Source: Octopus sinensis
Taxonomy: Eukaryota
DNA: 64,000 nucleotides
Assembly: GCF_006345805.1 (NCBI RefSeq)
Contig: NC_042999.1
Coordinates: 143,034,001-143,098,000 of the forward strand
Direction: 5' to 3'
Below, one piece after another: positions 1-58,696 of this stretch (the stretch's first letter is position 1; each line of letters begins with the position of its first letter). The notes beneath the pieces were generated by a model, which was not told the DNA's origin, made no database searches, and was given only the letters and a program-made list of their open reading frames with translations. The position numbers and the translations under genes are program-made.

Positions 1-53
1 TATTATAGCTGAATATATGATTAGTTCAAACAACCAAAGAAATAGTCTCTTAC

Positions 54-189
54 CAATTGCATTGTAGAAAAGACATCTTTCAAGTCCTGATATGTTGAGT
101 GATAAGTATAATTGTCTCCATACTCATCAAAGTCTTCTCTTATCTTAGCAATTGTGGCCTTTGTTGCATGGATGATATTTTTGGGAGTC
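54..189 (-). CDS. LIG4: LIG4 coding exon 15 ([10 protein letters not shown]...FDEYGDNY...LKDVF)
   Basis: TTCAAG acceptor, GTAAGA donor; inter-BRCT XRCC4-interaction region (D.YGD.Y). Confidence 0.93.
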
Positions 190-11157: not shown

Positions 11158-11190
<33 letters not shown>

Positions 11191-14100
11191 ATGTACACAC
11201 ACACAACAGGCTTCTTGGCTCCTTTCAGTTTCCACCTACCATATGCAATCACAAAGCTTTGGTTGGCATGGGGCTATTGTAGAAGGCACTTGCCCAAGGT
11301 GCCATGCAGTGGGACTGAACCTCAAACCATATGGTTGGGAATCAAAGTTCTTACCACACAGTTACATCTGTGTCTTTATATGTGTATGTGTGTGAATGTA
11401 TGTGTATGTATATATGAGAAAAACAGAGAGAGAGAGAGAGTTTGTGTTAAAGGGAAACAATGCTTTCAGCTAAAGTGAATAACTTACCAAACTCGCCAGT
11501 GTCTGAGTTGTATCCAAGCATTTCTCCATCTAAGATACAGGAATGGATACCAGGAAGAAAGCTCTCATGAATGTATTGTGTAATGGTGCCTTGAAAGGCA
11601 GATGCTCCAAATGTTTTTGAATAATTATGTCCACTGGAAATGCAAATAAATAAATGAAGAAAGCTTGCATGGTTATTTCTTGGCAGTGGTAGTTGTGGTA
11701 TTGATAATGAATGCAAGTTATATACATATACATAAATATATATACATACACAAAGAGCATGTTATTGTATATACAATAACATGCCATTCACTTCCCAGAA
11801 CTTTTTCCATGTGCATCTCACTCTAGCTACTGTCACCGAGTCTAATCCACTCCTCTATTCTTCATGTCTTTATGTATTCATCATCATCATCATCATCATC
11901 ATTTAGCGTCCGCTTTCCATGCTAGCATGGGTTGGATGGTTCAACTGGGGTCGGTGAAGCCAGAAGGCTGCATCAGGCCCAGTCTGATCTGGCAGTGTTT
12001 CTACGGCTGGATGCCCTTCCTAACGCTAACCACTCCGTGAGTGTAGTGGGTGCTTTTTACGTGCCACCCGCACAGGTGCCAGACAGAGCTGGCAAACAGC
12101 CACGGACGGATGGTGCTTTTTATGTGCCACCAGCACGGGGGTCTTCTGTCTTAATGCCATTTTCAAAATTCATCTCAACATCCCTCCCATCTACAGTCTC
12201 TTTCATACACACCTTATACTTAAGTGTAACTGTTATATTACTAAATGACCTACTCACACCACCTCATTTTCACTCAGCACATATTGTACATTTAATTGAG
12301 TCCACTCCAAACATCTTCATTCCACAATGCTTCTGACCACTTTCCTGTTCTCTCCACCTCACAAAATGTTTTACCATTTACCATCTTCTTTTACTTTCTG
12401 ATATTTATCCTCATACCTTTTACCTCCATACAGTCCATCCATATATTTATCTTTACTTTCAATCCAACCATGCTTGCTATTATTAAGCCATATCATCTAC
12501 GGATAGTAATTCCCAAAGTAAACTCTTCTTTACACTTAAAGTCAGTAGCACCTTCATCATGATTACAAATAGTAATAAGTTTAATACTGATTCCTGGTGC
12601 TATCTAACCTTCACTACAAACTCAACATTGTTTCTGTCTTCTGTTATTGTGGCCGTGTATACTCTCTTATGTGGAGGTGCATGGCTTAGTGGCTAGGGTG
12701 TTAGACTCATGAGCGTAAGATTGTGGTTTCAATACCTGGACTGGATGATGTGTTATGTTTGTAACAGTATCAGAAAGGATAGGTAGTTAAGTTACCACTT
12801 TAACAAAATAGAAAGATGATACCACATTAGCTAGGATAGTGTGCATGTAAGAAACATCAGAAGACAATATTTTACTGTTAATAAATACAACAATTTATTC
12901 CTTGAATGGTAGTTCACACATGTCAGTAGAAAGCATATCACAAGGTTATTAATGTTAAAGTTAAAGTTAAACAGGGTGTAGTGTGAGACAAACTAATTTC
13001 TAATAATGTACAAGTTGGTTAAGTTTGTAACTTGAAGGTTTTAAAGAGTTAGTATATACAACAAATCCAATGAGTGGTATGCAAGGGGAGTTAGAATCTT
13101 GCGGATAAATCAGTGACTACATCTTGTCAACTTGAAGTACCAACAGCAATGAGGTGTTTTCATCTTGGCAGTCCAACACAACTCTCTTTGATTCTTGAAA
13201 AAGGCGTGCTTGACTGCTGGGTAGAAGTTGCCACATGTATCCTTCCACAGCCAGCAGTAGTTGGATGAAATGGGCAAAGCATGACTGAGCTATGCTGCCA
13301 CAACAAAATAGTGCTAATATGTCTCACTACATGTTCTTAAGCAAAACACTTCATTTCAATGTTGTTCCAGTTCACACAGCAGGTAAAAATGAGTAATCCT
13401 GTAACAGAGTGGCATCCCATCTAGACATGAAGAATAGAGGAATGGATTAGACTCGGTGACAGAGAGAAAATCGCAGTTGTGGCATATACTGGTGTCACAC
13501 AAATGGCACTCATGCTGGTGGCAAGTAAAAGCACCCACTACATTCTTGGAGTGGTTGGTGTTAGGAAGGGCATCCAGTTGTAGAAAACCATGCCAAATCA
13601 GATTGGAGTCTGGTGCAGCCTTCCAGCTTATATATACATATACATATACATATATCATCATCATTGTTTAATGTCCACTGTCTATGCCGGCATGGGTTGG
13701 ACCATATATATAAATCTCCTGCAATGGGTTTAGAGCAGGCATTTGGCCCCAAATCGGTAGTTGTAGGTGGATTTATCTGGCCTACATGGGTTAGATGTGG
13801 GTAGGAATGATGCTGTACTATTCACACACACAATGTAAATGGCCTATATCAGGAAAAATGTCTTACTTTCGAGAGAAGTAACTATAGTCATCATTTTGTT
13901 TGTGAAGCTGTATCCTTTCACCATCAAATTTAGTCTCAATCAAATAGGGCTTCCCAGACAATACTTCAGAAATCTACAAAAAAATTCAAACATATATATG
14001 TATATATATACAACATTTACACATGATTCCAAAGAATCAATTTCTGATTTTATGTTTATGATAACCTTATGCATCAATGGTTGTATATATTATTGCAATG

Positions 14101-14210
14101 CTCATGAGATTGATTTTTGAAGAAAAAACTGTAAATCAATGAAATAAAAAGACTTGCTTATGCCATACTCCTTGGATGCAATGATGTATATATATATAGA
14201 TGTATGTGTG

Positions 14211-14263
<53 letters not shown>

Positions 14264-17200
14264 TGGATGCGTTGTCTCCTTAAGCAAAACACTTAATTTC
14301 ACGTTGCTCCAGTTCACTCAGCTGGAAAAAATGAGTTGTACTTGTATTTCAAAGGGCTGGCCTTGTCACATTCTGTGTCAGGCTGAATCTTCTTGAGAAC
14401 TATTTTACGGGTACGTGTGTCTGTGGAGTGCTCAAACACTTGCATGTTAATTCCACGAGCAAGCTGTTCCATTGATCAACTGGAACCCTTGTCATTGTAA
14501 CCGACGAAGTGCCAGTTTAGTTTAGCTTCTATAAATATATAGATTATGTATTGGCACCACATAATAGCACCCATGCCATGTAAAAGCTGAGTGAAAGGAA
14601 AATTGTACAATGCTATATGGTAGTGAGATGTGTGCCCTAAATGCAGATGACACATGAAGACTAGAGAGGAATAAAACTAGTATACTCTGTTGGATTTGCT
14701 ATGTCAATGTCAAAGAGGAATTAGGTGTAATGTAAGAGAGATGACTGCTGGTTTGGTCATGTGATTGCATATGGATGAGAGAGTTGCATAAAGAAGTGCT
14801 GACCACTTAAAGTGGATGGAGCTTGTGAAAGAAGAAACACAGGAAGATATGGGTTGAAGTAATGAAGGACAATCTCAAGATACTGAACCTTAAGGAAGAG
14901 ATGACAAAGGACAAAGTAATCTGGTGTCTTGCTGTGCTTGAGAAAACCTGACTACCACAACAGAATTGATATTCTAAAACTACCTTGGTAAATGTTTGAA
15001 CATGTGAAGTTCTGCCCCACCTTCATTCTCATTGCCCCCGTCAAGCTTCCCCAACATCTCATTCCTTACACTCATCACATCTTTATCTCTGGTATTATTA
15101 AGCTATCATAATCTCCTGAAAGCAGAATAGGCACATTCTATGCACTGTCACCCCTACCTTGTTACCTTCTGCTCCACCTCTCTAGAACCATTTTCATTCC
15201 TTATTGGTTTCTCTCTAGCCATGCTCTCTCTCTCTTCTGCTAGACTTCCACTAGATTCCTTAGAATCACTTTCATTCCTTATCTTCCTTGTACCATGCTT
15301 TTTCCTCTCTGCCAGACTCCATCCTTACACCTGTTTCATCCCCTATCTCTCCCAATGCCTTCACATATCTAACATAACTCCCACCCCCACGAACTACTCC
15401 TATATCTCTCACCTTCAATTGCAACATCCACCTCGATTCCAGCTAACCATTTCTCCTTATATTCTTTTGAAATTTTCCTTTCTGTACCTTCACCCAGTCC
15501 AATCCTCTGTATCACTTTATGTTTATACCTTCATTGTGCCTTGAGGGTATATCCTGATACATATCCACCAACATCTCTCTCACTTTCTCAATCTCAATCC
15601 TTCCTTTATCTCTAACTGCTTTATCCTTGTATCTCTTCCATAGCAAGACATCTATCTCTATCTCTCAATTATTCTTCTAACTTCTCATCAACTAGCATGA
15701 AACCACTGCCTTCAATACTACTCCCCCTGTTTGAGGGGACTTTGTTTTGTTTTGCAAGTTGCTTAGTGACTCTGCCAGTGCTGGTGCCACATAAAGAACA
15801 CCCAGTACACTCTGTAAAGCAGTTGGTGTTAAGAAAGGCATCCAGTGATATAAACTATGTCAAAGCAGACAATAGAGCTCAGTATAGCTCTCTGGCTTGC
15901 CAGCTCTTGTCAAACTGTCCAACCCATGCCAGCATAGAAAGCAGACGTTAAATAATGATGATAATGATGCATATAAAGAAACTGTTAGAATATCAAAATT
16001 GTCAACTATTCTTCTATTATAACTTCTTTTATATGGGATTAAATAATTAAAAATAGAAACAAAGGAAATATACAGATATAAATAAAAGAAGTGAGACACA
16101 TTGAAAATAAGTTATAAGTTTAGACAAGTATAGTTACCTTGTTTGGGTGAGCAGTTTCTCCTAACATTGGTGAAAATGGAGTAAATAATGAAATGGCAAT
16201 CTCATGAGATCTGATGTTAGGATCTGATAGTTGTAAACAGACCTTTAAAAGATAGAAAACAAGTCAAAGTTGTTATTATTACTAGCTGGACCCGTGAAAA
16301 CTTCACGGAAAACATAGAAAATGTATGCATCTGTAAATTGTGTGCTGGTGCCATGAGAAATGCTTCTATATTGTGACACTTACAGAATATAGAAAGAAGT
16401 GTGAAACTGATAACTATATAATCCAACCAAAATATCTCGTTACACAAACGTAAACAGAATTACTATTTAGCCTTAAAATACATTGAACATATTCAAAGAA
16501 CCTTCTTTGTTTAGTGGTATGGAATGTTCTACTGGTATTCTTTTATTCTTTTACATGTTTCAGTCATTTGACTGTGGCCATGCTGGAGCACTGTCCTTTA
16601 ATCAAAGAAATTGACCCCTGGACTTATTTTATGTAAGCCTAGTGCTTCTTCTATCAGTCTCTTCTGCCAAACAGGTAAGTTATGGGGACTCAAACACACC
16701 AACATCGGTAGTCAAGTAATGGTGGAGGGGGAAAAAACACAGACACAAACATACACACATAAATATAGACACACACATCAATATGACGGGCTTCTTTCAG
16801 TTTCCATCAACCAAATCCACTCATGAGGTTTTGGTTGGCCTGAGGCTATAGAAGACACTCTTTAAAGTACAGAGTTGAATTTCGTGTAGCCACCTGCTGG
16901 CAACTTTTTTCCCCACCCATTTTTCTGGGCTCTTTTCACAGCTATACCTCATTCAAAATTTGCATTAGCTTTTGTATGAAAAAAAAAGGAAAGGAGGGGA
17001 GCTTGTTTGTAGATTGTAGAGAAAATGTTAAATGTGCCTGAAAGAAAAAAAAAAAACATGGTCTTTCTCCCTAAGTAAAAGACATGAAGAACTATCAAAG
17101 AAGGCAAATAAGTACCAGGGGTGGGGGAAAGAAGAGAGAACTAACACTCGATCCTTCTAGAACTCCTGGGATAAAAAGGTAAACACCTGAAAGACTTTCC

Positions 17201-20200
17201 CTCTATTCATTACTAAATGTCTTTCCCTCTTCTTCATTGTTAAAAGTAAAGAAGCTAGAAAAGATTGATCGTATTTCATTCTAATTGTCATTTTAAATGT
17301 CTGAGGCTTTCCTTTCTGTCTCTATCACTTCACCCACTTTCTCTACAGTTAAGAGAGTTAAAGTGCATGGCTCAGTGGTTAGGGGTATTTGGCTCACAAT
17401 CATAAAATCATGAGTTCAATTCCTGGCAGCGTGCTGTGTTCTTGAGCAAGGTACTGTACTTCACCTTGCTGCAGTCCACTCAGCTGGCAAAAATGAGTTG
17501 TAACTGTATTTGAAAAGGGGCCAGCCTCATCACATTCTTTGTGAGGTTGAATCTCCCTGAGAACTATGTTATGGCATGCATGTCTGTGGAGTACTCAGCC
17601 ACTTGTGCATAAATTTTATGAGCAGAATGTTCAGTTGATCAGATAAACAGGAACCTTGTCATCGTAACCGACGAAGTGCCATTTTTTAAAAAGAGTGAAA
17701 GAAAAGGAAATGTTCCATATTGTAAGGCAAAAATGTCATGTGTTCAGTATAAGTATTGAAAGCTAAAACAAAATAAGTGCTATTCCGTCATGTAGTGACT
17801 TTGCCCTTGACTCGCGTTCAATTTGATAACAACAACAACCTGCACATTGGTGTTTATCTGGGGGCTTGGCCTCCAAATCTGTGAGACCCACAAATGCCGC
17901 TGTTAGGACTGGATTAACACCCATAATGACCCTAATGACTAAAAAGATATCAGAAATTATTATATTATTTATTCATTTATTTAAGAAGTGATAGTTAGAG
18001 AAATATTTAATGTGTTGTTTTGTGTTCAAGAAGACAGTCACATGTAATTTGATGGTAATTAACAACCAGCAAAAGTTCTGAAACCGAAAGTCATTCTAAG
18101 ATATCACAGTTCTACTGACCTTTTCAAGATTATTGTTCACATTAAACATCTCTTCAGCATCAGGGTGATATACACCAAATATGGAATTTTGACTCAAACC
18201 AACTTTTAGTTCCTTCATTACCATGCGGATCAACCACTTCTGTTCAATGGCAGTCATGTTGCGCAAAAGGTGAAGCATTGTTTCATGTACAACATCATGT
18301 TTCTTGCTAGTATTGGAGACTGCGATATCATCCAAACATTTGTTCACATCTGAGATACTCAGGTTACCATTTTTGGGACAACGGTTCTTCAGCACATAGT
18401 AGGCTACACTGGCAAAATCATTGTTCTGTCAAAAAATATTAAAGTTTCATGAAGTACTTTCAGATCAAACAATTCCCATTCTAGGCAACTTACACTCATT
18501 TGAATATAATTACCATATTTACTTGCATACAAAACCATGTTTTTTCTGGATTTTTAAACCTAAACATAGGGCTGTGCATTATACAAGAACTAAGTATGAA
18601 CACCTTTTCCAGTCAAGTGTACTGAAAGGTTAAGATCACTATAATAATGTTACATTTTTTTTTGATGAAAGCAGTAAAATATTTGATGTTTGATACAACA
18701 GCAGAATATGCATCTGTAGAATCACTGTTGTCAATGTTCAGGATTTTTCAGTTTTTGAAAGCACTACATGAGTTACTCAGTGTGAATATTAGATTACTTA
18801 ATGATGAAAAAGAATAATACATAAATACAGTCATTATAGTAAAGTGACTATAAATTGGGAGAAAAAATAATTTTGTTCTTGAAATACTCTATTTATTATA
18901 ATGAACTACAACTATATACATTTTTGTTGAGAGAACAAACTTATTTAACAATGAAACTATTTAAGTGGAAGTGTATACAGTTTACATTATGTTTCTTATG
19001 TTCGTCTATACTGGCTGATGTCAGAGAAGACACACTTTTACAGCCTACACTGGTTAAGTTCAAAGGTCACTTTTGAATTTGTTTATTGCTTTGAGAATAG
19101 GTAAATTTTTTTCAATGCAGTTATAATAAAACTGATTTTTCTCTATATCATAGTACTAAAGAAAATGCACTATGTATTAGAGAGATATTTGTTTTTCAGG
19201 GCTTCATTATTTGCCAACAATAGTGTGCATTATACATAAGTGCACATTGTATATTAAAAAAAAATAAGGTAAATTTTGTATAGTTTGTTTTTCCTTTCCC
19301 TTTCAAGTCAGTGACAAAATATCGAAATATATTGTCTACAACAGAATTCACAACTAAAACAGTTTGTAAATTTGAAGGATTGTTTATACCACATATATAG
19401 TTATAAGTCAAAATATGGTAACATGCACTAATAAAAGCTATAGAATGCAAATACTATATATTTTCTTTAAAAAAAGTCCAAATTTACTATATTCAAAGGA
19501 AGTCTTTAAAATGGGCTCCATCTAGTTAGTAGTAGCATCTCCACAGTATAACTTAAGGCAGTGGAAGATAAAATTTACGGTAGAAAAATTCATGTTGCAT
19601 AGTTAAGCCAGTAGTTTAGTTAACTAATAAGAAGAGTTAGAGTTAGAATGTTGTTTTCTTGACTAAGAAGGGTCAGTAGTGATGACTGATATGTCTCTTA
19701 AACTTATCAGCTGATAGGAATGATTGAGCAAACATTCAAATTGCTCTATCAAGTGTAATGCTCATTTATTTACATTGTTTTGTATTAACCACAAATATCT
19801 TGTAACTTTAAGATTTCAATGATGTGACATTTTATTTTTAAAATGGCATTGTAGGATAGGTATGAGGGGCTGGATCTGGCCAGTTTGAATATAAAACAGA
19901 TAGAATATTTAGGCCAAATACAGGTGGTTTAAATGCTAAAATGTTAAGACAGTTACTGATATAATGTTTAGGGACAAATCATCTGTTCAACACTCAGTAG
20001 TTAGTAGATGGACACGGCAGACCTAGATGACACACAGTGGCCAGTAATTAAAAAAATTGCTGAAGGAAAATTTTCTGATATGTATTTACTTACAGCTTCT
20101 CTTTTAGTATTAAAATTTAGAAGTTTAGAAGCATCTGGACTGTTTTTCCCAAGACATAATACTTTAATTAAAAGTTTTGCAAATGTATGCTGCAAGCAGG

Positions 20201-21326
20201 AGAAAAAATAAAAGATAAGTTAGTTATGAATACCATTGTTTTCAAGTCAGTCAAATCTGAAATATTATGAGTGTAAAAACATATCTGAAGAAACGCTACA
20301 GTTCATGGCATTGGTTAGTCATTGAATAACCATAAAAATTACATAGAAATTAGCAGAAACATATTATATACAGTTAGTACTTTTATGTAATGAGACTTTG
20401 TGTATCTGACAGTGAGGTACACAAGAGTTCAGGTGGAACTTTGGTAACTGTAGTACCAATATATGAGAGAGAGCATCATCCTCATCATTTAATGTCTGTT
20501 TTCCATGCTGGCATGGGTTGGGTGGTTTGGTAGAAGCTGGTAAGGCCAGGAGCTGCACCAGGTTCCATTGTCTGTTTTGTCATGGTTTCTACAACTGGAT
20601 GCCCTTCCTAACACCAACCACTTTACAGAGTGTACAGGGTGATTTTTATGTAGCACCAGCATGATAATGTGTGAGAGAAACTTGATATTTTATTGATAAT
20701 ACTGAACCAATGACAACTGAGCGAATGCAGCAATTCAGAGTAATTTCTAAAATGTTTGATGAAGGTGGTATGACTTCTCTATTGATCAAATAAACTGAGC
20801 TTGTGCCTTCTGAACATCTCAGTTGGATTTGAAGATGTCATTTGAAAACTGAAGAAATAAAAATAGATGATAGAATAAACCAGTCTGAGAGGAAGATGAT
20901 GCTGTTTAACCTTAGGTCAAACTTGATCAAGCAGAACTATGATCAAATGCATTTTAATTGTGACCAGCCCATCAAATCAGTAGGCTGTAATTTAAAGGAA
21001 AATTGACTACTATTTTTAGGGTATTGAGAGAGCATGTAGATGTTCCCTCATTAACTGAGAGGCTATAAAAATTGGTAAATAAATAGTAAATAAAAATTAA
21101 CTGGAATAAATCATTAGAGTGGTAATGACACAAAACACATTTCATTTTCATTTTTCAAATAGGTTGTAACAAGGTTGAAGAAAATAGAAAATGAATACTT
21201 CTTTGATTCCATAAGCAACACGTTCATTTTCCAGGTGAGGAAGTAAAAGCCGCATCACTGGGTAAAATGAATCAGTCTGAAATAAACAATATATATACAT
21301 AAATAAAATACATAAATGTGTATGAC

Positions 21327-21384
<58 letters not shown>

Positions 21385-22447
21385 TATAATTATTGTCTTT
21401 GAGAGCGGTCGAGTTCATTTTTAGTATTCTCGTTTGTGAGAGCAGTCAAGTTTATTTCAGATATTCTCATTTTAAAACTCTACGGCTAATAATAATTCTA
21501 CTATAGGCATACAACCAGCAATTTTGAGGGAGGTGGCATCAACCTGTGTTCATTGACTCCTGTTCAACTGTTACTTATTTTATTGACCCTGAAAGGATGA
21601 AAGCCAAAGTTGACCTTGGTGAAATTTGAACTCAGAATGTAAAGATGGATGAAATATCATTTTGCCCAGTGTACTAACAATTCTGTCATCTCACCGCCTT
21701 AATAATAATAATAATTATAATAACAATAATAATAATAATAATAATAATAATAATTTGAATTCAAAACACAGAGCTGAAAGAAACGCTGCTAAACATTTCA
21801 TTCACCCTGCTAATGATTTTGCCAGTTTGCTACTTTTTTAAAAAATGGGTAATAATAAGAATAACAAGATCACTCAGAGCGCAAACCTCTGCCAAGGAAA
21901 TACCAACATCCTCTCAAAGATTAGCCAGAGATGATTTTTAAAATGAAAATATCTGAAATAAACTCGACTGCTCTCACAAACAAGAATACTAGAAATGAAC
22001 CTGATCACTCGCAAAAATTAAGTAAAAAAATTGGGAAAATAATCCAGAATTCTTGTCTGGGACCAGATCAATCCCATAATCTAGTCAGTTCATGCCAGTC
22101 ATGAGGTTAAACATCACTGGAAGTTTCATCCGAATCCATCCAGCGATTCTTGAAATATCTTGTCCATAGACAAACAAACAAACACAAGTGAAAACAATAC
22201 CTTCATTAAGGCGGAGGTAATAAAGTTCACTGAAAATGAAACTAAATTTAAAACTTACAGTTTTCTTGCCTTTATGCAGTTCCTTATGTTTTTGTCGCCA
22301 TTGATCAAGAAATAGCCTCAAATTCTGCTTCTTTTTCTCAATTCCTTGAGCTTTCTTTATTTTCTCAAGCAGACCTGTTAACTCTTCAAAATGGACTTTA
22401 TCAGAAATTTTAGTCTCAACAGGTTTGTCTGTCTGAGCAACATCCAT
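54..22447 (-). CDS. LIG4: DNA ligase IV, multi-exon gene; 15 coding exons in window (2349 nt, 783 codons), 3' end (second BRCT) beyond left edge
   Basis: Hand-spliced exons 22259-22447, 21199-21276, 20094-20189, 18120-18425, 16138-16242, 13867-13973, 11488-11633, 9838-10039, 6744-7026, 5395-5559, 4885-5022, 3947-4093, 2420-2537, 518-650, 54-189. All introns are GT-AG and phases join into one frame. Motifs: [20 protein letters not shown], adenylation motif [37 protein letters not shown], then a BRCT domain. Confidence 0.97.
518..650 (-). CDS. LIG4: LIG4 coding exon 14 (DSQTYCVLA...[14 protein letters not shown])
   Basis: CATCAG acceptor, GTAAGT donor, BRCT W..DC motif. Confidence 0.93.
2420..2537 (-). 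CDS. LIG4: LIG4 coding exon 13 (BRCT1 start, VHNIF...GGQIVQNP)
   Basis: TGACAG acceptor, GTAAGG donor, GG..VQNP BRCT motif. Confidence 0.93.
3947..4093 (-). CDS. LIG4: LIG4 coding exon 12 (basic linker, KSGGKLS...SHVKM)
   Basis: TTCCAG acceptor, GTGAGT donor, KKKR NLS-like linker before BRCT1. Confidence 0.9.
4230..4570. repeat. Degenerate ~30-bp minisatellite in a LIG4 intron
   Basis: Recurring GTATTCTGG.CACTAGGTATTTTAATCAAT-like units. Confidence 0.55.
4885..5022 (-). CDS. LIG4: LIG4 coding exon 11 (VKAAEIV...[14 protein letters not shown])
   Basis: GTACAG acceptor, GTTATT donor, motif VI RFPR. Confidence 0.95.
5395..5559 (-). CDS. LIG4: LIG4 coding exon 10 (VGSGYT...[15 protein letters not shown])
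   Basis: TTCTAG acceptor, GTCAGT donor, OB-fold VGSG motif. Confidence 0.95.
5911..6186 (+). mobile_element. (GAT)n-tailed retroposon copy
   Basis: Same 3' body as 7745-8214. Confidence 0.8.
6744..7026 (-). CDS. LIG4: LIG4 coding exon 9 ([22 protein letters not shown]...SFCK)
   Basis: CTCCAG acceptor, GTAC donor, motifs IV and V. Confidence 0.96.
7745..8214 (+). mobile_element. (GAT)n-tailed retroposon copy with four internal 67-bp tandem units
   Basis: Units start at 7756, 7823, 7890, 7957. The 3' body ...AACCGTCCAACCC...GGACGTTAAACGATGATG is shared with copies at about 2790, 5911, 13485, 15765, 22555 (plus) and 11881, 20475 (minus). Confidence 0.85.
8424..9758 (-). mobile_element. Degenerate Tc1/mariner DD37E (TRT-like) transposon in a LIG4 intron
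   Basis: Inverted repeats of about 100 bp (CCCAGTTGGTTTGCACACTATGG... at 8428; complement ending 9755). Transposase fragments [37 protein letters not shown]. 37 residues between the second D and the E position (now K). Stops and frameshifts present. Confidence 0.85.
9838..10039 (-). CDS. LIG4: LIG4 coding exon 8 ([10 protein letters not shown]...[11 protein letters not shown]...KKGVS)
   Basis: TTACAG acceptor, GTGAGT donor, motif IIIa FD, phases 1/2. Confidence 0.95.
11488..11633 (-). CDS. LIG4: LIG4 coding exon 7 ([10 protein letters not shown]...[11 protein letters not shown])
   Basis: TTCCAG acceptor, GTAAGT donor, motif III DGEM, phases 2/1 match neighbours. Confidence 0.96.
11881..12140 (-). 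mobile_element. (GAT)n-tailed retroposon copy
   Basis: Reverse complement of the same family. Confidence 0.8.
13867..13973 (-). CDS. LIG4: LIG4 coding exon 6 with active-site lysine ([14 protein letters not shown]...YFSR)
   Basis: TTGTAG acceptor, GTAAGA donor, ligase motif I KxDGxR. Confidence 0.96.
14640..14950 (+). mobile_element. Degenerate RTE LINE 3' coding fragment in a LIG4 intron
   Basis: Decayed WFGHV..M..........K.....G....GR...W..V.K..L..L.L...MT.D...W pattern. Confidence 0.55.
16138..16242 (-). CDS. LIG4: LIG4 coding exon 5 (VCLQLSDP...[13 protein letters not shown])
   Basis: TTAAAG acceptor, GTAACT donor; not in the ORF track, found by manual translation. Confidence 0.93.
18120..18425 (-). 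CDS. LIG4: LIG4 coding exon 4 ([17 protein letters not shown]...NNNLEK)
   Basis: TGACAG acceptor, GTCAGT donor; EQKWLIRM and [11 protein letters not shown] motifs of the DNA-binding domain. Confidence 0.96.
20094..20189 (-). CDS. LIG4: LIG4 coding exon 3 ([10 protein letters not shown]...KREA)
   Basis: TTGCAG acceptor, GTAAGT donor, phase 0/0. Confidence 0.93.
21199..21276 (-). CDS. LIG4: LIG4 coding exon 2 ([26 protein letters not shown])
   Basis: TTTCAG acceptor, GTATTC donor, phase 0/0, conserved LIG4 motif. Confidence 0.95.
21400..22220. repeat. Inverted pair of a dispersed repeat between LIG4 coding exons 1 and 2
   Basis: 21401-21477 is the reverse complement of about 21935-22010. Confidence 0.55.
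22259..22447 (-). CDS. LIG4: LIG4 coding exon 1 (MDVAQ...KGKKT)
   Basis: ATG at 22447, donor GTAAGT at 22258, acceptor TTTCCAG 16 nt upstream of the ATG (exon starts 22463). Confidence 0.9.
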
Positions 22448-22715
22448 AGTAATAAGTTTTAAGCTGGAAACAGAAAGATGAAAGACTGTCATCCAGAATG
22501 TGACCATCAAGAATGATTGAAAAAATTTTTTATTGGACCCTCAACGTCAAGGAAATAATCAACCTGGTGCAGCTCTTTGCCTTACTATTCCTAGTTAAAT
22601 CATCTTACCCATGCTAGCATAGAAAACAGATGCTAAATGATGATGATTATCAGCTTTTTGGAGACAACTTACTTCAATGAATTTCATCCAAAGAAAAGTG
22701 GACATTAAAACAATG

Positions 22716-22770
<55 letters not shown>

Positions 22771-22966
22771 TTTAGATATTTTTACATTCTAATTGTGCTT
22801 GGGTTGCTGTTACTTTTGCTCTTCATAAGTACCAGTAATATACTTGCATCACATCTTTCAACCCCTTTAAAAAAATTTGTGCTCTATGCGAAGAGTGGAA
22901 GAGAATACTCTTTCATAATTCTGTTGGAGTTGAACATGTAAATACCACTGGCACATCAACACTCAC

Positions 22967-23016
22967 CACTTCATCTATCGAAAAAGCCTGTTTAACCTCG
23001 ACCTCACACAAAAAGT
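22967..23016 (-). other. LIG4: Predicted 50-nt upstream LIG4 exon carrying an in-frame ATG
   Basis: Acceptor TTTTATATATTTAATAG (AG at 23018-23017), donor G|GTGAGT at 22966. ATG AAG TG joined to the 22463 acceptor reads [13 protein letters not shown], in frame. Prediction only. Confidence 0.5.
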
Positions 23017-23080
23017 CTATTAAATATATAAAAGTATGAACAGGCTCAGGTGAGGCTGTGTGGTAAGAAGCTTACTTCCC

Positions 23081-24535
23081 GTGCATGCGTCGGTCTATTC
23101 GCTGTATTGATTTTTGATGAGACGGATTTTTTTTGAGCTGCTTGGCAGCAGTTTGTCGGTGAGTGTCATATCGGTGGAAAGGAATGTATTCGGACCTTAG
23201 CGAGTATGAGCTGTCCTCAGTGGAGGAGGAGCTCATTAAGGCGGTAAATAGAATGGATGAGCATTTGGAAAGAGTAAAGAGTTTTGCTGAAGCTGCAGAA
23301 GTGAAGAAAAGGGAAGTGGACCTTGCTGGACTGAAGGAGCTGCGTAAGATGACACAGAAGGTGGGGTTATGGTAAATATGGAAAAGAAGACCATTACCTA
23401 CAAGGTGTACTCAGTGGAGAGTAGGAAGGTGGAGCAGATGGAGATGGAAAAAGTAGAAAAAAGCATTGAAGGGTCTTTCGAAGGAAGTGCCATATATAAC
23501 GAAAGGAAATGGATATGGGACGGTGGTTGCCCAGTTAAGGACAGCAGAGGAGGCAAAGAGGCTGGTGAGTACAATGGTGAGAACGGAGGAAGTAGTACTT
23601 CTACCCACATACCTTGGAAGAAAGACTTCTAATGTGAGGGTAGAAGGAATTCCACCCGATATAGAAGTGGCTTGGGTTACAGCAGCTGTCCTCATTGGTA
23701 GTGAGGAGGAGGTGGCTGCCCTCCACGCCACAGAGATGGAGGAAGGAGGATATAGAGGAAAAACATTGGAAATCATCATACAAGTGGAAGTGAAGCACAT
23801 AGAAAATTTGATGGAGACAGTGACGGGAGAAATAGTATTGAGAATATGGGTAGAGGGCAGAATTCTGCGATGCTTTAAATGTTGCCAAAAAGGCCACATT
23901 AGAGCTCACTGCCCTCTACAGAGGAAAACGACAGAAGAAGCGTTGCTGAAGACGGAGAAGAAAAAAGAAGTACAGATAGATGGAAGGAACAAGGAGGACG
24001 AATGGACAGTGACAGAGAATAAAAGGAAAAAGAGAAAGAAGAGGAAGAACAGTCAGTGTGATGTGGGACCCCAGACCAACTCCATTCCACCCAAGACCAC
24101 TCAGACCCACCTTCCCCATACAGACACCAAACCCACCCACCCCCTCTCCCTACTTGAAAAAAAAAAAGAAGATAGTACAGGCACCACAAAATTTACAAGA
24201 CCCCTCCCCCAGTGAAAAAGGTTACGTGTACATGGAAGAGAGAGTGTTGTCACTCAGTGATGGGGAAAACGGTAAACCAAAGACTAGATTAAAGACTAAT
24301 GAAGACTCGGGACTCAGAGGTGGCGAGTGGTGTTACTCAGTGTGGGGTGAGTAACACACTTTTCATATTCTCATTTCTCAGTAGTATCATTATTCTAATA
24401 TTTTGATTTTAATGTTTTTCATGTTCAGTTTCATGTCATTCATAGCATCATATTTTATTTTAATTGTTATATGTACCCACATGTGTTGTAGTGTTACCCT
24501 CTATGTAATGCCTTTATGGCAATTTAAAAGAAATA
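23081..24535 (+). mobile_element. ORF1-only non-LTR retroelement (half-L1/Tx1-like) with CCHC zinc knuckle, inserted into a SINE head
   Basis: 16-bp TSD AAGAAGCTT(A/G)CTTCCC at 23065-23080 and 24536-24551. Frameshifted gag-like ORF pieces 23163-23375, 23369-23632, 23466-24215 (RCFKCCQKGHIRAHC), 24058-24354. No endonuclease or RT; A-rich 3' end. Confidence 0.85.
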
Positions 24536-24685
24536 AAGAAGCTTGCTTCCCAACCACATGGTTCCGGGTTCAGTCCCCCTGCGTGGCACCTCGGGCAAGT
24601 GTCTTCTACTATAGCCTCGGGCCGACCAAAGCCTTGTGAATGGATTTGGTGGACGGAAACTGAAAGAAGCCCGTCGTGTGTATGT

Positions 24686-24727
<42 letters not shown>

Positions 24728-24935
24728 CTTTGCGTTTGTGTTTGTCCCTGCCACTCCCGCTTGACAACAGATGTTAGTGTGTGTTTACGTCTCCGTAACT
24801 TAGTGGTTCAGCAAAAGTGAGCGATAGAATAAGTACCAGGCTTACAGAGAATAAGTCCTGGAGTCGAGTTCTACGACTAAAAGGCGGTGCTCCAGTATGG
24901 CCGGAGTCAAACGACTGAAAGAAATAAAAGAATAA
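24536..24935 (+). mobile_element. 3' part of the tRNA-derived SINE split by the ORF1-only insertion
   Basis: Continues the head sequence from 23041-23080; colinear with 58697-59106. Confidence 0.85.
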
Positions 24936-25315
24936 AAATTCCAAGTTCATATTATAAAAAAGTCAAGGAAGTGGAGAGTAGATCGGATTTGGGAATATGA
25001 AAAGGAAGAAAAAGTCCAAAACTTTTGATTTTACAATATGTCAAAATTCCATAGAAAAAAACTTACATATCATAAATGATTATACTTAAATCACTATCTA
25101 CTAAATGTATTGTTTATCTAACTTCCCAGATAATGCTGTGCACATAATGTACTTCCTTGTTTAATAAAACATGAAACCATACGAAAGATTGTTTTCTTTA
25201 CCTTAAATTTATTTCATAAAACTGGGTGTGTATATCAAGCAATAAGTCCTGGTTAGAATGAAACACATTCCTAAAGGTGAAATAAGGAAGGAATTGCAAC
25301 GTCAAGACAGAATGT

Positions 25316-25711
25316 TCAAACTTTGCTGAGGATACATAGGCATACACCCAGAACAATAAGTAACATGCCAGATAGCGATCGACGTGGAATTTTTTCTCCG
25401 AGAAAATAACCTGTTAAGACTGTAAAGACAAATGTGAGGGAATTGGTTAAAGGTACGGCAATAGAAAGATCAGCCGAAGCGAGAGTTAAATAGAATAAAA
25501 CAGAGCCGCACTGATTAATTAGGAAAGCCGCTACATACTTCAAACGAAATACTAGAAACAACAGCTCGGACTTTAGCTGTAAAATGGTGTTTTGCTCTTT
25601 TATGTTCTCAATACCAGCACTTGTTTTCTTTAGAATAGGGTTAGTGCATCCCCATATTACTGATACTAACACTAGCCAAAAAACACTTATTAAGGTATCC
25701 GAGTAAGTCAT
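25316..25711 (-). CDS. TMEM234: Transmembrane protein 234 (EamA/DMT-like small membrane protein), intronless CDS, 131 aa
   Basis: ATG at 25711; motifs WGCTNP, FLINQCGSVLFY, DLSIAVPLTNSLTF, GEK typical of TMEM234. Predicted 88-nt 5' UTR intron 25731-25818 (GTAAAC...TTCCCAG). AATAAA at 25213-25208. Confidence 0.93.
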   Translation of the reverse strand: MTYSDTLISVFWLVLVSVIWGCTNPILKKTSAGIENIKEQNTILQLKSELLFLVFRLKYVAAFLINQCGSVLFYLTLASADLSIAVPLTNSLTFVFTVLTGYFLGEKIPRRSLSGMLLIVLGVCLCILSKV

Positions 25712-25818
25712 TGGAAATTAATTTAGAAATCTGGGAATAAAAACAATAAAAGAAGGGAGTTAACTGCCGGTGACAAGCCAGAACTTGTTTTCTATACAAA
25801 TAATGTAAATCAGTTTAC

Positions 25819-26066
25819 CTTTACTTCGTTTATCTTGCTTCGTTCACACACAAGTTAATTGCTGATAGCGAGCTGCCAGTTTATAACTAAATAAATGGTA
25901 TTTTCACAATAATAACGTTGATTAGATTTTATAACTTATAACCACATTTTTTCGATTTATATTAATTTTCTAATTAACCAATCTTGAGTGAGGAAGACGC
26001 GGGGGGGGGGAGGGAGGTTACGCAGTGAAGTTCAGGGAGACAACTTCTTCAGCATCCGGTCTCACA
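25819..26066. promoter_or_regulatory. Bidirectional promoter and first-exon region between TMEM234(/LIG4) and NDUFA6
   Basis: Only 248 bp between the minus-strand donor at 25818 and the NDUFA6 ATG at 26067; CpG-containing with a G-rich GC-box-like tract at about 25998-26016. TSS positions not determinable. Confidence 0.7.
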
Positions 26067-29000
26067 ATGGCTGCTTCACGCGCTTCGGTTCAGGGTATGA
26101 AGCTTGTGAAACCCATACTCTCTGTCGACAGCACCGAAGCTCGGAGAAGGGTCCTAAATTTATACAAGGCTTGGTATAGACATTTACCGTACTTAGGTAA
26201 GGCTTTCCTTCCTTTCTAGCTATTCTAGAAATAAGTTTATCTTGTAGGTTGTTGTATGTCATTGTGAAGGACACGTAAAAGTGATTTTGTTTTCTTCTAT
26301 TTTTATTAATAAATCAGTTATTGAAATTGAATTTTTTATTCTTTTTACTCGTTTTGTTACTTTTATGAACGAAACTTCTCTGTCATTTATAGACATAACC
26401 AAACACAGGAGGTTTGACAGTCGTATCAAAGGTTACTTTTGTTCTGTCGTTCTAAAGATGTTTATTCTGCTAATTCGGTAGACTTCTTTCAGTTACATCA
26501 ATTGCACATCGTATGTATTTGAAGAATTATCGATTCAACAGAACACGGGAGTTATCTCATATTTCAAATCAGTATATGTTTGAATGTCGGAAAAATTTGT
26601 AAATTTACTCGTATATTCGGATATTGTTTCAAAAACACTCGTCTAAAAAGAAAACATTTGTTAACCTCAAAGTCAACCCTCATTAAACAATTAAGATCGA
26701 AAGCATTTTAAGCCATGACCACCTTGTAACACATTATTTATATATCCCTCTTTATATGTTGGACATCATATAGTTCAGTGCGGGCTAAGATATTGAGCAT
26801 AGTGAGCTATTTTTACACCTTAATTGGAATTAAATCCGTAATAAAACAGTCATTAAGGTAAGGGCGAGAACTCCGATATTTATAGTGTTGAAAACGAAAC
26901 GAGAACATCCCAGAGAAACAAGATGGAACAGGTAGGATAAAACCAGAGGTGAGGGCACTCGGTTGATTAGCGAGTTTGATCTTAGGAGGAATGCGGTTGA
27001 CAACTGTTTTGTCACAGTATTTTCAAAGTTCCTTTGCAGAGTAGTGTCTAACAGTCATAGCCAAACTGCGGCCCTCGGGACCTTCTGAATGGTATGCCTT
27101 GAATTTTTAGTAGTACGACTAGTCTCATGATGTGTCATATCTCGTGCAGCCTGCTTCTCGGAAAAGGTTGCCTATACCTGGTCTAATAAATACAGATCGT
27201 AAAACAACTTTGAGAGAAAATTTGTAATTATCATTCACAACGAAAGATTTCCAAATACTTAAAAGTCGCTTAATAAATAATCTAATCCGCTGGTATTTTA
27301 GATTTTAACTTTTCTAATAAGAACACTTGTTTTAACTTAAGTAACAAAGGCCTACAAATAGAATACTTGCTACACTACAACAAACACGACAAAGTGATCG
27401 TGTCGTGTCGTAAACAATCTTAAGAGTTTGGAGGCGGGGCAAAATGAGTAATTTCTGATTTCTTGTTATTTCCCCCAACCTATTTTCAATCATTACATCA
27501 CAATTATTGCATAATGTTAGGAATAAAAATTGGTCAGCATTGTTGGTATTGTAATTGAGAGAGTTTGAAACATAGGTAACGTACTTTTTTCCAAGAAATT
27601 TTCCTTCAACTTTGACCTGATCCAAATTGAGGTTGCTAATAAAATATCTAGATACTTTTTAGTGTCTAATAATCAATATTCTTTTCTCTGTTGGATTCCA
27701 AGTCAATTTCTTCCCACAGTAATGTTTAATTTAATAGTTTTCAATTTTCAAAGGATGATGTCTAATGCGGGGCAAAATGAGTAATAACTATTTTCAATAT
27801 GTTCACTTTAATTGCATGGTGCATCAGGAATAGAGCTACACCAACTGATCGTGAAGAAGCTATAGAGAATATTTTATGTTGAGTTTAGATTTAGTCGTGT
27901 TTTGTTAATTTCATATGTGCCATGTTTTCATGATTCTCTTTCATTTGACCTAGATATTTAAAATTTTTCTTGCATTTCTGATTTTTCTGATGTCCAATGA
28001 TGGATATTGATGTGCATGAGTATTTCTTCAGATGTAATTCTGGAGAATTGAAAAGGCAAATTTACCTTATCTTGTCTTACTCATTTTGCCCCATCTAAAT
28101 CTGTCTATTATTTTGCTCAAAGAGAAGAGAGATAATTTTCCAAAACAGTGTTCTGAATATATTATTTTTAATGTATTTAGAGAAGATCATTTGCTTAGCT
28201 GATACAGCTTATGTATGGTAGTGAACATTTGTAAAAAAATTTTTTTCTCATAGTCAAAAATGCAGTAAATTTTACACATTGTGCCTCACCTCATACTTTT
28301 CATCATGAAAGTTAAAACAAAAGTGATCCTATTAAAAAAGTTAAATATTTTAAAGAATGAAAATAAAATACTAATGGATTATTAAACAAATTATTTAACA
28401 AGTGACATTTAATAATCTATCCTGGATTGTTTTGATTTTGTTATTAGAATTGCTTCTTTCATCTTCGTGTGTTTCTATTTCAGTGCGTGATTATGATGTT
28501 CCTTTGACTATAGGAGAATGTAAAAACAAACTTCGAGAATTATTTTTGAAAAACCAACATGTTACAGATCTTAGAACTATCGACGTACTTGTCATTAAGG
28601 TATTTATTTTGGAAATATTTTTCTTGTGGAAATTGAGCCTTCATAAAATATCAAAGTAAAATTTATTTAATTGGTAAATATTTGATTTCAGAATATATTA
28701 GTTGTTTCTACCTCAATTTCTATTGAATTTGATTTCATTAATCAACATGACAAATAAGCTCATCCATCTTCAAACTATACTCGCAAAAAAAATTTGTGTG
28801 CATCACTGTAAGCTATCAAAATGTTCATAGATTACAAGGTTTCCATTGCTGCAATCATTGAATCGTAGCATTCAGTCAATCATATCTATTTACAGTTAAG
28901 TCAGCTGAGTCATTTGGGAATTTGGGGTTAGAGCAATGGAGATAAAATATCATCGGTGTCAGGATATGCACTTTAGAATTACCTTAAATTTTTAGTTGTA

Positions 29001-57623: not shown

Positions 57624-58696
57624 GATGACCAGCGAGTCAAAAAAGAAGCAATAAAAACTGTCAAGGAGGCTCGGTAAACTTACTGTAAAAGAAAAAGAAA
57701 AAGAAATAATCTCAATAATAGATAAACAATTTCTTATAAACAAAAGATTAATAAACCATGCTATTCTTTCATGTAATATATTTATATACTTCGAGTTCAC
57801 ATTTAGATGTTATAGAGTAACACACTTTTATAGGTACCGGATTGAAAGCAATCCACTGACACCTTCATTGCGGTATTAGAGTACCGGATTTAAGCATCAG
57901 CTAAACAAGTTACATATAGTTCAGGGCCTCACAATTCGCAGGGGTCGCAAACTAATTAAAAGGAAGATATGTTTTTAGTGACTTTCTGGCGTAAGTTTTT
58001 AACAAGGGGTCTTCAAGCTTTATATAGCATAGGGTCTCACCATGTCGAAATCTGGTGCTGGTTTAACTATAATACAGTAAGATACTGTTATTGCACCCTT
58101 CGAATAATTTTGTTTAATACATTTACACATATATATGAAATACTCACATACATTCCTACTGATCATGCATTCATCCCAGAATTACATATCAGATGACTCC
58201 AGGTACAAGTTTTTCTGGCTTCGTCAAAAAGAAGGTCGGCGTCCATAAACTTTTACAGGCTTCTGGAATCTGGAGGAGTAAAGGGGCAAATTTTCCTCAA
58301 ACTACTGTCCTGGCACGAATGTGTGCAACAGAGTGGACTCCACTAAAGATCTCCAAAGACCAGATGGTGGTGATGAGCCTAGTGACAGGTTAAGTTTACC
58401 ATACAAGAATAGGTACAATTCATCGATGGGTTTCACAGTTTCCAGTTACCGGGAGTCGATTTGAAGTAACTTTGTAAATATTTTCAGACCTTCACGAATA
58501 GAACGTTTGAATTGCTTCCATTAAAGTAAATAAAACAAGATAATATAAAGCAGTCGTCCAGACTAATGATATCCCACTTGGTGTTCCACCGGTGAGCCTG
58601 TCGCTCTCTCTGCCTGAAAGTAGTATTTTCGAAGCTATCAAAATTTACTTCCTTACACGTTTTCTCATGCACATGGCTGTAACTTTCTAGGGTTTC

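What the first reader, a model, noticed from the sequence alone, without database searches (positions are those of the whole stretch)
22447..25900. LIG4 and TMEM234 may share a first exon and promoter (nested or bicistronic unit)
Seen: the LIG4 start exon has an acceptor 16 nt before its ATG, and a further predicted exon (22967-23016) also begins with an acceptor, so transcription must start further upstream. The 23.04-24.94 kb interval is SINE and LINE. Next come the same-strand TMEM234 CDS, an 88-nt intron and a donor at 25818 beside the NDUFA6 promoter. Inference: one non-coding first exon splices either to 25730 (TMEM234) or past it to LIG4, so a single ~250-bp bidirectional promoter would drive NHEJ ligase, TMEM234 and a complex I subunit. 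In human these three genes are unlinked.
Basis: partly seen in the sequence, partly recalled or inferred. Interest (0 to 1): 0.72.

Follow-up and report, generated by a model that had tools for sequence, protein, structure and literature searches.

The report
TMEM234 and LIG4 share one transcript
In octopus and cuttlefish the DNA-repair ligase gene LIG4 appears to have no promoter of its own: it is transcribed together with the small membrane-protein gene TMEM234 just upstream, and in cuttlefish the mature mRNA carries both reading frames.

Summary
The window is Octopus sinensis chromosome CM016861.1. On the minus strand lie a single-exon TMEM234 CDS (25711-25316) and the first 15 coding exons of LIG4 (ATG 22447). 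NDUFA6 starts head-to-head at 26067.

The transcript-based O. vulgaris model CAI9720237.1 (98% identical locus) can only be built in one way. A first exon ends at 25943, 120 nt from the NDUFA6 ATG. It joins a 69-nt exon inside the TMEM234 3'UTR (25270-25202). That exon joins the LIG4 acceptor at 22463. The whole TMEM234 CDS sits in intron 1.

In cuttlefish, all 7 RNA-seq contigs shown, which stand for 24 read, join the TMEM234 exon to fully spliced LIG4 across a canonical 3.3-kb GT-AG intron. Twenty-one of the 24 carry both complete ORFs, 70 nt apart, so the mRNA is dicistronic.

The donor after the TMEM234 stop and the LIG4 acceptor are conserved in four octopods. Nothing else in the intron is conserved. 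Lottia lacks the linkage.

The predicted exon 23016-22967 and the 88-nt intron are unsupported. This is a new example of a known kind. How LIG4 is translated is open.

The parts
26067..26196 (+). NDUFA6 exon 1 (ATG 26067; donor GT at 26197), head-to-head with the TMEM234-LIG4 unit
   Evidence: A 124-aa Complex1_LYR gene is called here in O. sinensis, O. vulgaris and Argonauta. The exon-1 peptide is 93-100% identical in four octopods.
25948..26066 (.). Putative bidirectional promoter region, between the NDUFA6 ATG and the first ATG of the O. vulgaris LIG4 model. Contains a C/G tract at 26001-26017.
   Evidence: The NDUFA6 CDS start and the start of the 937-aa LIG4 model are 110 nt apart in O. 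vulgaris and 120 nt apart here. The TSS itself was not determined.
25943..25947 (-). 3' end (ATGTG) of the LIG4 5' exon 1 used in the O. vulgaris model; weak donor GTG|GTTATA at 25942
   Evidence: The sequence is identical in O. sinensis. The donor GT is lost in the third octopod.
25731..25818 (-). It contains a block conserved in all four octopods (about 25790-25760, ..TTCTGGCTTGTCACCGGCAGTTAAC..)
   Evidence: The motifs score well, but the acceptor AG is absent in species X and Argonauta.
25316..25711 (-). TMEM234 CDS, single exon, 131 aa plus stop. The start codon is in a weak context (ccaATGa).
25202..25270 (-). 69-nt exon inside the TMEM234 3'UTR (acceptor tttag|G at 25270, donor AAG|GTAAAG at 25202/25201). 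This is LIG4 5'UTR exon 2 in the O. vulgaris model. If the unit is read from 25730 instead, it is the end of the TMEM234 exon of a dicistronic mRNA.
   Evidence: The donor is conserved in O. sinensis, O. vulgaris, species X and Argonauta.
25208..25213 (-). AATAAA hexamer 6 nt before the donor; a candidate TMEM234 poly(A) signal
   Evidence: It is present in three Octopus-type genomes and absent in Argonauta.
25160..25165 (-). ATTAAA hexamer 36 nt into the intron; a candidate poly(A) signal that would compete with splicing
   Evidence: The ATTAAA hexamer is aligned in O. sinensis, O. vulgaris and species X; Argonauta has ATTAAT at that position, so no canonical signal is conserved there. The cuttlefish genome has ATTAAA about 30 nt after its donor.
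22464..25201 (-). Intron between the TMEM234 exon and the LIG4 ATG exon (2738 nt). It holds a SINE (24536-24937), another repeat (22561-22650), an (AT)n tract (about 22768-22719) and a + strand 249-aa ORF (23466-24215).
   Evidence: There is no orthologous conservation with Argonauta between 25183 and 22534, apart from repeat or microsatellite similarity.
22259..22463 (-). LIG4 ATG exon (acceptor AG at 22465-22464, ATG at 22447, strong context actATGg)
52..21276 (-). Fourteen further LIG4 coding exons: 21276-21199, 20189-20094, 18425-18120, 16242-16138, 13973-13867, 11633-11488, 10039-9838, 7026-6744, 5559-5395, 5022-4885, 4093-3947, 2537-2420, 650-518, 189-52. The gene runs off the left end of the window.
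   Evidence: exact spliced mapping of XP_029633322, 737 of 907 aa.
22967..23016 (-).

Best explanation
TMEM234 and LIG4 form one transcription unit in coleoid cephalopods.

Transcription starts upstream of TMEM234. In octopods this is within about 120-350 bp of the divergently transcribed NDUFA6. The TMEM234 coding exon carries a 5' splice site shortly after its stop codon: 114 nt after it in Octopus (25202|25201) and 23 nt after it in cuttlefish. That site is joined, across an intron of 1.5-3.3 kb with no conserved sequence, to an acceptor just upstream of the LIG4 start codon (22463).

The product is a dicistronic mRNA: the TMEM234 ORF, a spacer of 70 nt (cuttlefish) or about 130 nt (Octopus, predicted), then the LIG4 ORF in another frame. 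Octopus also uses an acceptor in the TMEM234 3'UTR (25270). That splice removes the TMEM234 ORF and gives a monocistronic LIG4 mRNA.

Shown: the cuttlefish dicistronic mRNA; the two junctions of the O. vulgaris model; conservation of the splice sites.

Inferred: the same junctions in O. sinensis (identical sequence); the exact start site; a dicistronic form in octopus; TMEM234-only mRNAs made by polyadenylation at AATAAA/ATTAAA signals flanking the donor, in competition with splicing; and the way LIG4 is translated from the second position. For the last point I favour reinitiation, or leaky scanning past the weak TMEM234 start codon.
For: 1. The window is identical to O. sinensis GCA_006345805.1. 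The O. vulgaris locus is 98.3% identical and collinear.

2. The first 30 residues of O. vulgaris CAI9720237.1 (937 aa) are reproduced exactly by exon ..ATGTG|gt, then ag|69 nt|gt, then ag|CTTAAA..ATG. The TMEM234 CDS lies in intron 1. The same three pieces give an open frame in the window. Isoforms and UTRs in that annotation come from Iso-Seq and RNA-seq through PASA (PMC10700109).

3. Cuttlefish RNA-seq contigs L008-L011 hold a complete 132-aa TMEM234 ORF 70 nt upstream of a complete 919-aa LIG4 ORF. These four contig types stand for 21 of the 24 contigs read. The other three types (L012-L014) also begin inside the TMEM234 CDS.

4. Mapped to the Acanthosepion genome, the contigs show LIG4 split into 18 separate blocks, with the TMEM234 exon a further one. 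The TMEM234-LIG4 join is a canonical intron, aatg|GTAGGT ... ttcttag|G, of 3.3 kb.

5. The donor TAAG|GTAAAG is conserved in four octopods. The LIG4 acceptor AG is conserved in Argonauta.

6. Octopus-Argonauta homology runs without a break from NDUFA6 to 19 nt past the donor. It then disappears until the LIG4 exon.

7. TMEM234 is under purifying selection. Yet it is not called as a gene in the O. sinensis, O. vulgaris, Argonauta or Acanthosepion annotations. That is expected if annotators allow one CDS per transcript.
Against: No O. sinensis transcript was available, so the octopus junctions rest on another species' gene model.

That model's first-exon donor (GTG|GTTATA) is weak and is not conserved in the third octopod.

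O. vulgaris also has a 927-aa model that reads unspliced into the region upstream of 22463. This could mean a proximal start site rather than intron retention.

Short-read contigs cannot prove that one molecule carries both ORFs. L012-L014 start 100-125 nt before the donor.

Eight AUGs lie between the two start codons in the predicted octopus dicistronic form, so leaky scanning alone is unlikely there.

The spacer shows no unusual RNA structure.
Confidence: 0.75

Rival explanations
1. LIG4 has its own promoter. It lies either just upstream of the ATG exon, or inside the TMEM234 exon. The upstream junctions would then be minor read-through products that annotators and assemblers happened to pick up.
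For: The O. vulgaris 927-aa model starts unspliced upstream of the acceptor. Cuttlefish contigs L012-L014 begin within the last 125 nt of the TMEM234 exon. Two RefSeq transcripts encode the same O. sinensis protein, so 5' ends vary.
Against: Nothing upstream of the acceptor is conserved between Octopus and Argonauta except the AG and its pyrimidine tract. Every one of the 7 cuttlefish contigs shown, which stand for the 24 read, carries the spliced join to the TMEM234 exon, and 21 of the 24 span the full TMEM234 ORF. The donor after the TMEM234 stop is conserved over the Octopus-Argonauta distance (dS about 0.9).
Confidence: 0.15
2. The two genes share a promoter and a 5' exon but are never on the same mature mRNA. 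This is the cholinergic-locus type: TMEM234 mRNAs end at a poly(A) site at 25.2 kb, and LIG4 mRNAs always splice the TMEM234 ORF out. This would apply at least to octopods.
For: The only octopus model whose 5' exons can be read skips the TMEM234 CDS through the acceptor at 25270. AATAAA and ATTAAA flank the donor. Many AUGs in the octopus TMEM234 exon would hinder translation of a second cistron.
Against: Cuttlefish mRNAs are dicistronic, and there the donor is only 23 nt after the stop, leaving no room for a skipping acceptor. The 25270 acceptor is weak and its pyrimidine tract has decayed in Argonauta.
Confidence: 0.3
3. The joins are artefacts: chimeric de Bruijn contigs or mis-annotation.
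For: Logan contigs are short-read assemblies. L008 also carries an unrelated minus-strand ORF at its 5' end.
Against: The join removes exactly one GT-AG intron of the genome. It recurs in independent runs. An independent annotation in another order of cephalopods uses the homologous donor and acceptor.
Confidence: 0.03

Closest known systems
Cholinergic gene locus (VAChT nested in the first intron of ChAT; unc-17/cha-1 in C. elegans). From my own knowledge.
   Same: A small intronless ORF for a membrane protein lies on the same strand, between a common 5' non-coding exon and the coding exons of a larger gene. One promoter region serves both. Alternative splicing decides which ORF the mRNA carries. 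The O. vulgaris model fits this layout.
   Different: The two cholinergic products act in one pathway. TMEM234 and LIG4 have no known functional link. In cuttlefish the mature mRNA keeps both ORFs, which is not the cholinergic arrangement. The LIG4 5'UTR also reuses part of the TMEM234 3'UTR.
Animal dicistronic mRNAs that are not resolved by trans-splicing (Drosophila stoned A/B and Adh/Adhr; mammalian SNURF-SNRPN, GDF1-CERS1, MOCS2). From my own knowledge.
   Same: Two complete, non-overlapping ORFs in different frames sit on one spliced mRNA with a short spacer. The pair is conserved across a large clade.
   Different: The gene pair is new: full-text searches found no paper holding both names. 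Translation of the second ORF is untested. The upstream ORF is joined to the downstream gene by an intron that starts in its own 3'UTR.
Splice-versus-polyadenylation switches at composite exons (IgM secreted/membrane forms, calcitonin/CGRP). From my own knowledge.
   Same: A 5' splice site lies within a few tens of nucleotides of poly(A) hexamers (25213-25208 and 25165-25160). Use of one should therefore exclude the other.
   Different: No 3'-end data were available here, so the poly(A) sites are only motifs. The outcome would be one gene versus two genes, not two isoforms of one protein.
Nematode and tunicate operons resolved by spliced-leader trans-splicing. From my own knowledge.
   Same: Unrelated genes are co-transcribed from one promoter, and there is an acceptor just upstream of the downstream start codon.
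   Different: The acceptor is used in cis with a mapped donor. The contigs show no leader sequence. The mature RNA remains dicistronic.

Membership tests
Dicistronic mRNA (two cistrons on one mature transcript) | Two complete, same-sense, non-overlapping ORFs on a single spliced transcript | tested here: met
   Met for cuttlefish: contigs L008-L011 have TMEM234 132 aa, a 70-nt spacer and LIG4 919 aa, and LIG4 maps to the genome in 18 separate blocks. For O. sinensis itself this is only inferred from conserved splice sites.
Dicistronic mRNA (two cistrons on one mature transcript) | Both ORFs encode real, selectively maintained proteins | tested here: met
   TMEM234 matches PF10639 at 1.3e-38 and has dN/dS 0.12. 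LIG4 has its full domain set and is 95% identical to the composite exon query built from the window.
Dicistronic mRNA (two cistrons on one mature transcript) | The join is reproducible and not an assembly chimera | tested here: met
   The join has canonical GT-AG intron boundaries in the genome. It is seen in 7 contigs shown from different runs, which stand for the 24 read.
Dicistronic mRNA (two cistrons on one mature transcript) | The second cistron is translated from the dicistronic RNA | not testable with these tools
   Only indirect observations are available. The TMEM234 AUG has a weak context in all five species. AUG depletion is borderline in cuttlefish (P about 0.06) and absent in octopods. 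The spacer is unstructured.
Nested genes with a shared promoter and 5' exon (cholinergic-locus type) | The upstream gene's whole CDS lies in an intron of a transcript of the downstream gene, on the same strand | tested here: met
   In the O. vulgaris model, intron 1 (L004 10006-10677) contains the TMEM234 CDS (10237-10632). The sequences are identical at window 25942-25271.
Nested genes with a shared promoter and 5' exon (cholinergic-locus type) | The same first exon is also spliced to the upstream gene | tested here: inconclusive
   No TMEM234 transcript from an octopod was obtained. L005-L007 are unspliced genomic contigs. The proposed 25819 to 25730 splice is not conserved.
Bidirectional promoter (with NDUFA6) | Head-to-head genes with starts less than 1 kb apart | tested here: met
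   The NDUFA6 ATG at 26067 is 356 nt from the TMEM234 ATG at 25711 and 120 nt from the first ATG of the LIG4 model at 25947. Start sites were not mapped.
Bidirectional promoter (with NDUFA6) | The arrangement is conserved | tested here: met
   It is present in O. sinensis, O. vulgaris, species X and Argonauta. It is absent within 6 kb upstream in Acanthosepion and absent in Lottia, so it is specific to octopods.

The most novel reading that the evidence does not exclude
In coleoid cephalopods the only route to LIG4 protein is translation of the second cistron of a TMEM234-LIG4 mRNA. That would require reinitiation or internal entry after a 131-132-codon ORF. The arrangement would have arisen once, possibly when an intronless TMEM234 copy landed in the LIG4 5' region. 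It would then have been kept since the octopod-decapod split, and it would tie the amount of the end-joining ligase to the expression of a membrane protein.
Probability: 0.3. Interest if true: 0.7.

Novelty: new member of a known kind. Interest (0 to 1): 0.55.

Why it matters
There are three reasons.

**Translation.** LIG4 is the essential ligase of non-homologous end joining. If it sits behind a 131-codon ORF on its mRNA, across a clade that split more than 200 million years ago (date from my own knowledge), that is a natural and conserved test case for how animal ribosomes reach a long second cistron.

**Annotation.** TMEM234 is not called as a gene in four of the five cephalopod genome annotations seen here. 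One-CDS-per-transcript pipelines fold it into the LIG4 UTR or intron. It could therefore be scored wrongly as lost.

**Gene editing.** Edits or knock-downs aimed at the LIG4 5' region or promoter would also hit TMEM234, and in octopods probably NDUFA6 as well. Knock-down or disruption of LIG4 is often considered as a way to favour homology-directed repair.

Tried and rejected
- **Exact look-ups of TMEM234.** Look-ups of the window's TMEM234 and of the O. bimaculoides protein found no contig.
- **Short LIG4 query.** A search with only the first two LIG4 exons found nothing. A 577-aa composite query was needed.
- **L001.** This TMEM234 mRNA from a more distant animal is monocistronic and says nothing about cephalopods.
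- **L005-L007.** I hoped these were octopod transcripts. They are collinear, unspliced genomic contigs. The 152-aa 'read-through' TMEM234 (P0152) is a gene-caller artefact that reads TGA as Trp.
- **A possible LIG4-specific first exon.** A 52-nt Octopus-Argonauta match at 22740-22689 ends in a GTAAGT in Octopus, which looked promising. It is (AT)n plus the start of a common repeat, and the donor is not conserved.
- **Leaky scanning.** AUG depletion is not significant in octopods and is borderline in cuttlefish.
- **Structured IRES in the spacer.** Folding z-scores were -0.16 and +0.86.
- **'LINE' in the intron.** No Pfam match even at E = 5.
- **Spliced-leader trans-splicing.** I considered it because of the acceptor next to the ATG. 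I dropped it once the cis donor was mapped.
- **Literature.** Five searches for the gene pair, or for di- or bicistronic transcripts in cephalopods or molluscs, found nothing relevant.

Full report
**Identity of the window.** The LIG4 protein search returned O. sinensis XP_029633322. Its genomic locus L002 (GCA_006345805.1, CM016861.1) is 100% identical to window 20000-30000. On the minus strand, exact spliced mapping of that protein places 15 coding exons between 22447 and 52. The gene continues off the left end of the window. The 131-aa ORF at 25711-25316 is TMEM234 (PF10639, 1.3e-38). NDUFA6 exon 1 runs from 26067 to 26196 on the plus strand.

**The observation.** The acceptor 16 nt before the LIG4 ATG is real and strong and is conserved in Argonauta. 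The SINE at 24.5-24.9 kb and a second repeat at 22.56-22.65 kb have other copies in the window. The 'LINE' could not be confirmed. The exon 23016-22967 and the 88-nt intron 25818-25731 are motif matches only. The exon is not conserved. The intron loses its acceptor AG in a third octopod and in Argonauta.

**Octopus transcript evidence.** The cluster of O. sinensis LIG4 contains three O. vulgaris models of 937, 927 and 907 aa.
- The 937-aa model (CAI9720237.1) starts [35 protein letters not shown].
- I fetched the O. vulgaris locus L004, which is 98.3% identical and collinear with the window.
- I reproduced this N-terminus exactly from three pieces with canonical boundaries:
  - ..ATGTG|gt at L004 10001-10005;
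  - ag|69 nt|gt at 10678-10746;
  - ag|CTTAAAC..ATG at 13452.
- In window coordinates these are 25947-25943, 25270-25202 and 22463 onward. The O. sinensis sequence gives the same open frame.
- The first piece lies 110 nt (O. vulgaris) or 120 nt (window) from the NDUFA6 start codon.
- The whole TMEM234 CDS lies in the first intron.
- The second piece is TMEM234 3'UTR.
- The genome paper says that UTRs and splice forms were added by PASA from Iso-Seq and RNA-seq (PMC10700109). The junctions are therefore based on transcripts.
- The 30-residue extension is probably just 5'UTR. A 1-nt indel breaks its frame in the third octopod.
- The 927-aa model reads unspliced through the acceptor. This is either intron retention or a proximal start site.

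**Cuttlefish transcript evidence.** The sepiid LIG4 cluster (P0154) is carried by Logan RNA-seq contigs in 53 blocks of the collection, of which 24 contigs were read.
- Four contig types, standing for 21 of the 24 contigs, hold a complete 132-aa TMEM234 ORF 70 nt upstream of a complete 919-aa LIG4 ORF.
- The three shorter contigs also begin inside the TMEM234 CDS.
- Against the Acanthosepion pharaonis genome (L015), LIG4 maps as 18 separate blocks spread over about 25 kb.
- The TMEM234 exon ends at aatg|GTAGGT, 23 nt after its stop. It joins ttcttag|GTTGAC, 47 nt before the LIG4 ATG, across a 3.3-kb intron.
- This is a spliced dicistronic mRNA, not a chimera.

**Conservation.**
- The donor after the TMEM234 stop is TAAG|GTAAAG in O. 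sinensis, O. vulgaris, an unnamed octopod (L005-L007) and Argonauta hians. It lies 113-123 nt after the stop.
- The LIG4 acceptor AG is conserved in Argonauta.
- Octopus-Argonauta homology is continuous from NDUFA6 to 19 nt beyond the donor. It resumes only at the LIG4 exon. One apparent island in between is microsatellite plus repeat. The intron therefore holds no conserved promoter.
- TMEM234 has dN/dS 0.12.
- Lottia has neither TMEM234 nor NDUFA6 within 10 kb of LIG4. A LIG4 mRNA from another, unidentified animal (61% identical LIG4; species not determined) has a 125-nt 5'UTR without TMEM234. On this limited sampling the fusion may be confined to coleoids.
- The NDUFA6 partnership is specific to octopods.

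**Mechanism.**
- *Shown:* co-transcription, and splicing from the TMEM234 exon into LIG4.
- *Inferred:* poly(A) hexamers flank the donor. AATAAA at 25213-25208 is not conserved in Argonauta. ATTAAA at 25165-25160 is aligned in O. sinensis, O. vulgaris and species X, and degenerate (ATTAAT) in Argonauta. Cuttlefish has its own ATTAAA about 30 nt after its donor. TMEM234-only mRNA would therefore arise when cleavage beats splicing.
- *Open:* how LIG4 is translated.
  - The TMEM234 AUG has a weak context in all five species, and the LIG4 AUG a better one.
  - Octopus has eight intervening AUGs.
  - AUG depletion is at most borderline.
  - The spacer is unstructured.
  - In Octopus the skipping isoform solves the problem. 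In cuttlefish no such isoform was seen.

**Comparison and novelty.**
- The layout works like the cholinergic locus in the O. vulgaris isoform.
- It works like classic animal dicistronic genes in cuttlefish.
- It adds a splice-versus-polyadenylation choice like that of IgM.
- Full-text searches found no mention of the pair.
- I file it as a new member of a known kind.
- TMEM234 goes uncalled in the O. sinensis, O. vulgaris, Argonauta and Acanthosepion annotations. That is a practical consequence worth flagging.

**Limits.**
- The start site, the poly(A) sites and translation are untested.
- Species X and the cuttlefish species behind the SRR runs are unnamed.

Noticed in passing
window 56613-57800 (- strand): An intronless 395-aa ORF with a sulfotransferase domain (PF00685, 3.9e-24). 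It looks like a heparan-sulfate 3-O-sulfotransferase-type gene.
   Followed up: partly
window 23466-24215 (+ strand), with shorter ORFs from 23163: A 249-aa ORF antisense to LIG4, inside the TMEM234-LIG4 intron. It has one CCHC-like knuckle (CFKCCQKGHIRAHC) and a lysine-rich tail. It has no Pfam hit and no second copy in the window. It is shared with O. vulgaris and absent in Argonauta. It may be a decayed retroelement gag.
   Followed up: partly
window 21-245 (- strand): The ORF ending ..[15 protein letters not shown] is the C-terminus of O. sinensis LIG4 isoform X2 (793 aa). The isoform reads through the donor at 52 and truncates the protein by 114 residues at its C-terminus. Isoform X3 (792 aa) is truncated at the same point with a different tail.
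   Followed up: partly
window 26001-26017 and about 22768-22719: Two length differences from O. vulgaris lie in the regulatory or intron sequence. One is the C/G homopolymer tract between NDUFA6 and the LIG4 first exon, which is 10 nt shorter in O. vulgaris. The other is an (AT)n microsatellite, which is much shorter in O. vulgaris.
   Followed up: no
window about 25790-25760: The block TTCTGGCTTGTCACCGGCAGTTAAC lies 50-80 nt upstream of the TMEM234 ATG. It is the best conserved non-coding stretch across four octopods. Cuttlefish has GTTAACCGGT and an ETS-like ACTTCCGC just upstream of where contig L011 begins (L015 about 6010-6060). These are candidate core-promoter elements.
   Followed up: partly
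L008 89-502 (- strand): The longest cuttlefish contig also carries a divergent 137-aa F5/8 type C (discoidin) ORF upstream of TMEM234. Its first 409 nt do not map within the 10 kb of Acanthosepion flank. In cuttlefish the head-to-head neighbour therefore seems to be a different gene from NDUFA6.
   Followed up: no
L002, L003, L004, L015 (regions orthologous to window 25711-25316): TMEM234 is not called as a gene in the O. sinensis, Argonauta hians, O. vulgaris or Acanthosepion pharaonis annotations, although the ORF is intact in all of them. Only O. bimaculoides has it (XP_014772656).
   Followed up: yes
L005 1016-1474: The 152-aa 'TMEM234' P0152 reads the TGA stop as Trp. This is a genetic-code artefact of the gene caller, not read-through or editing.
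   Followed up: yes
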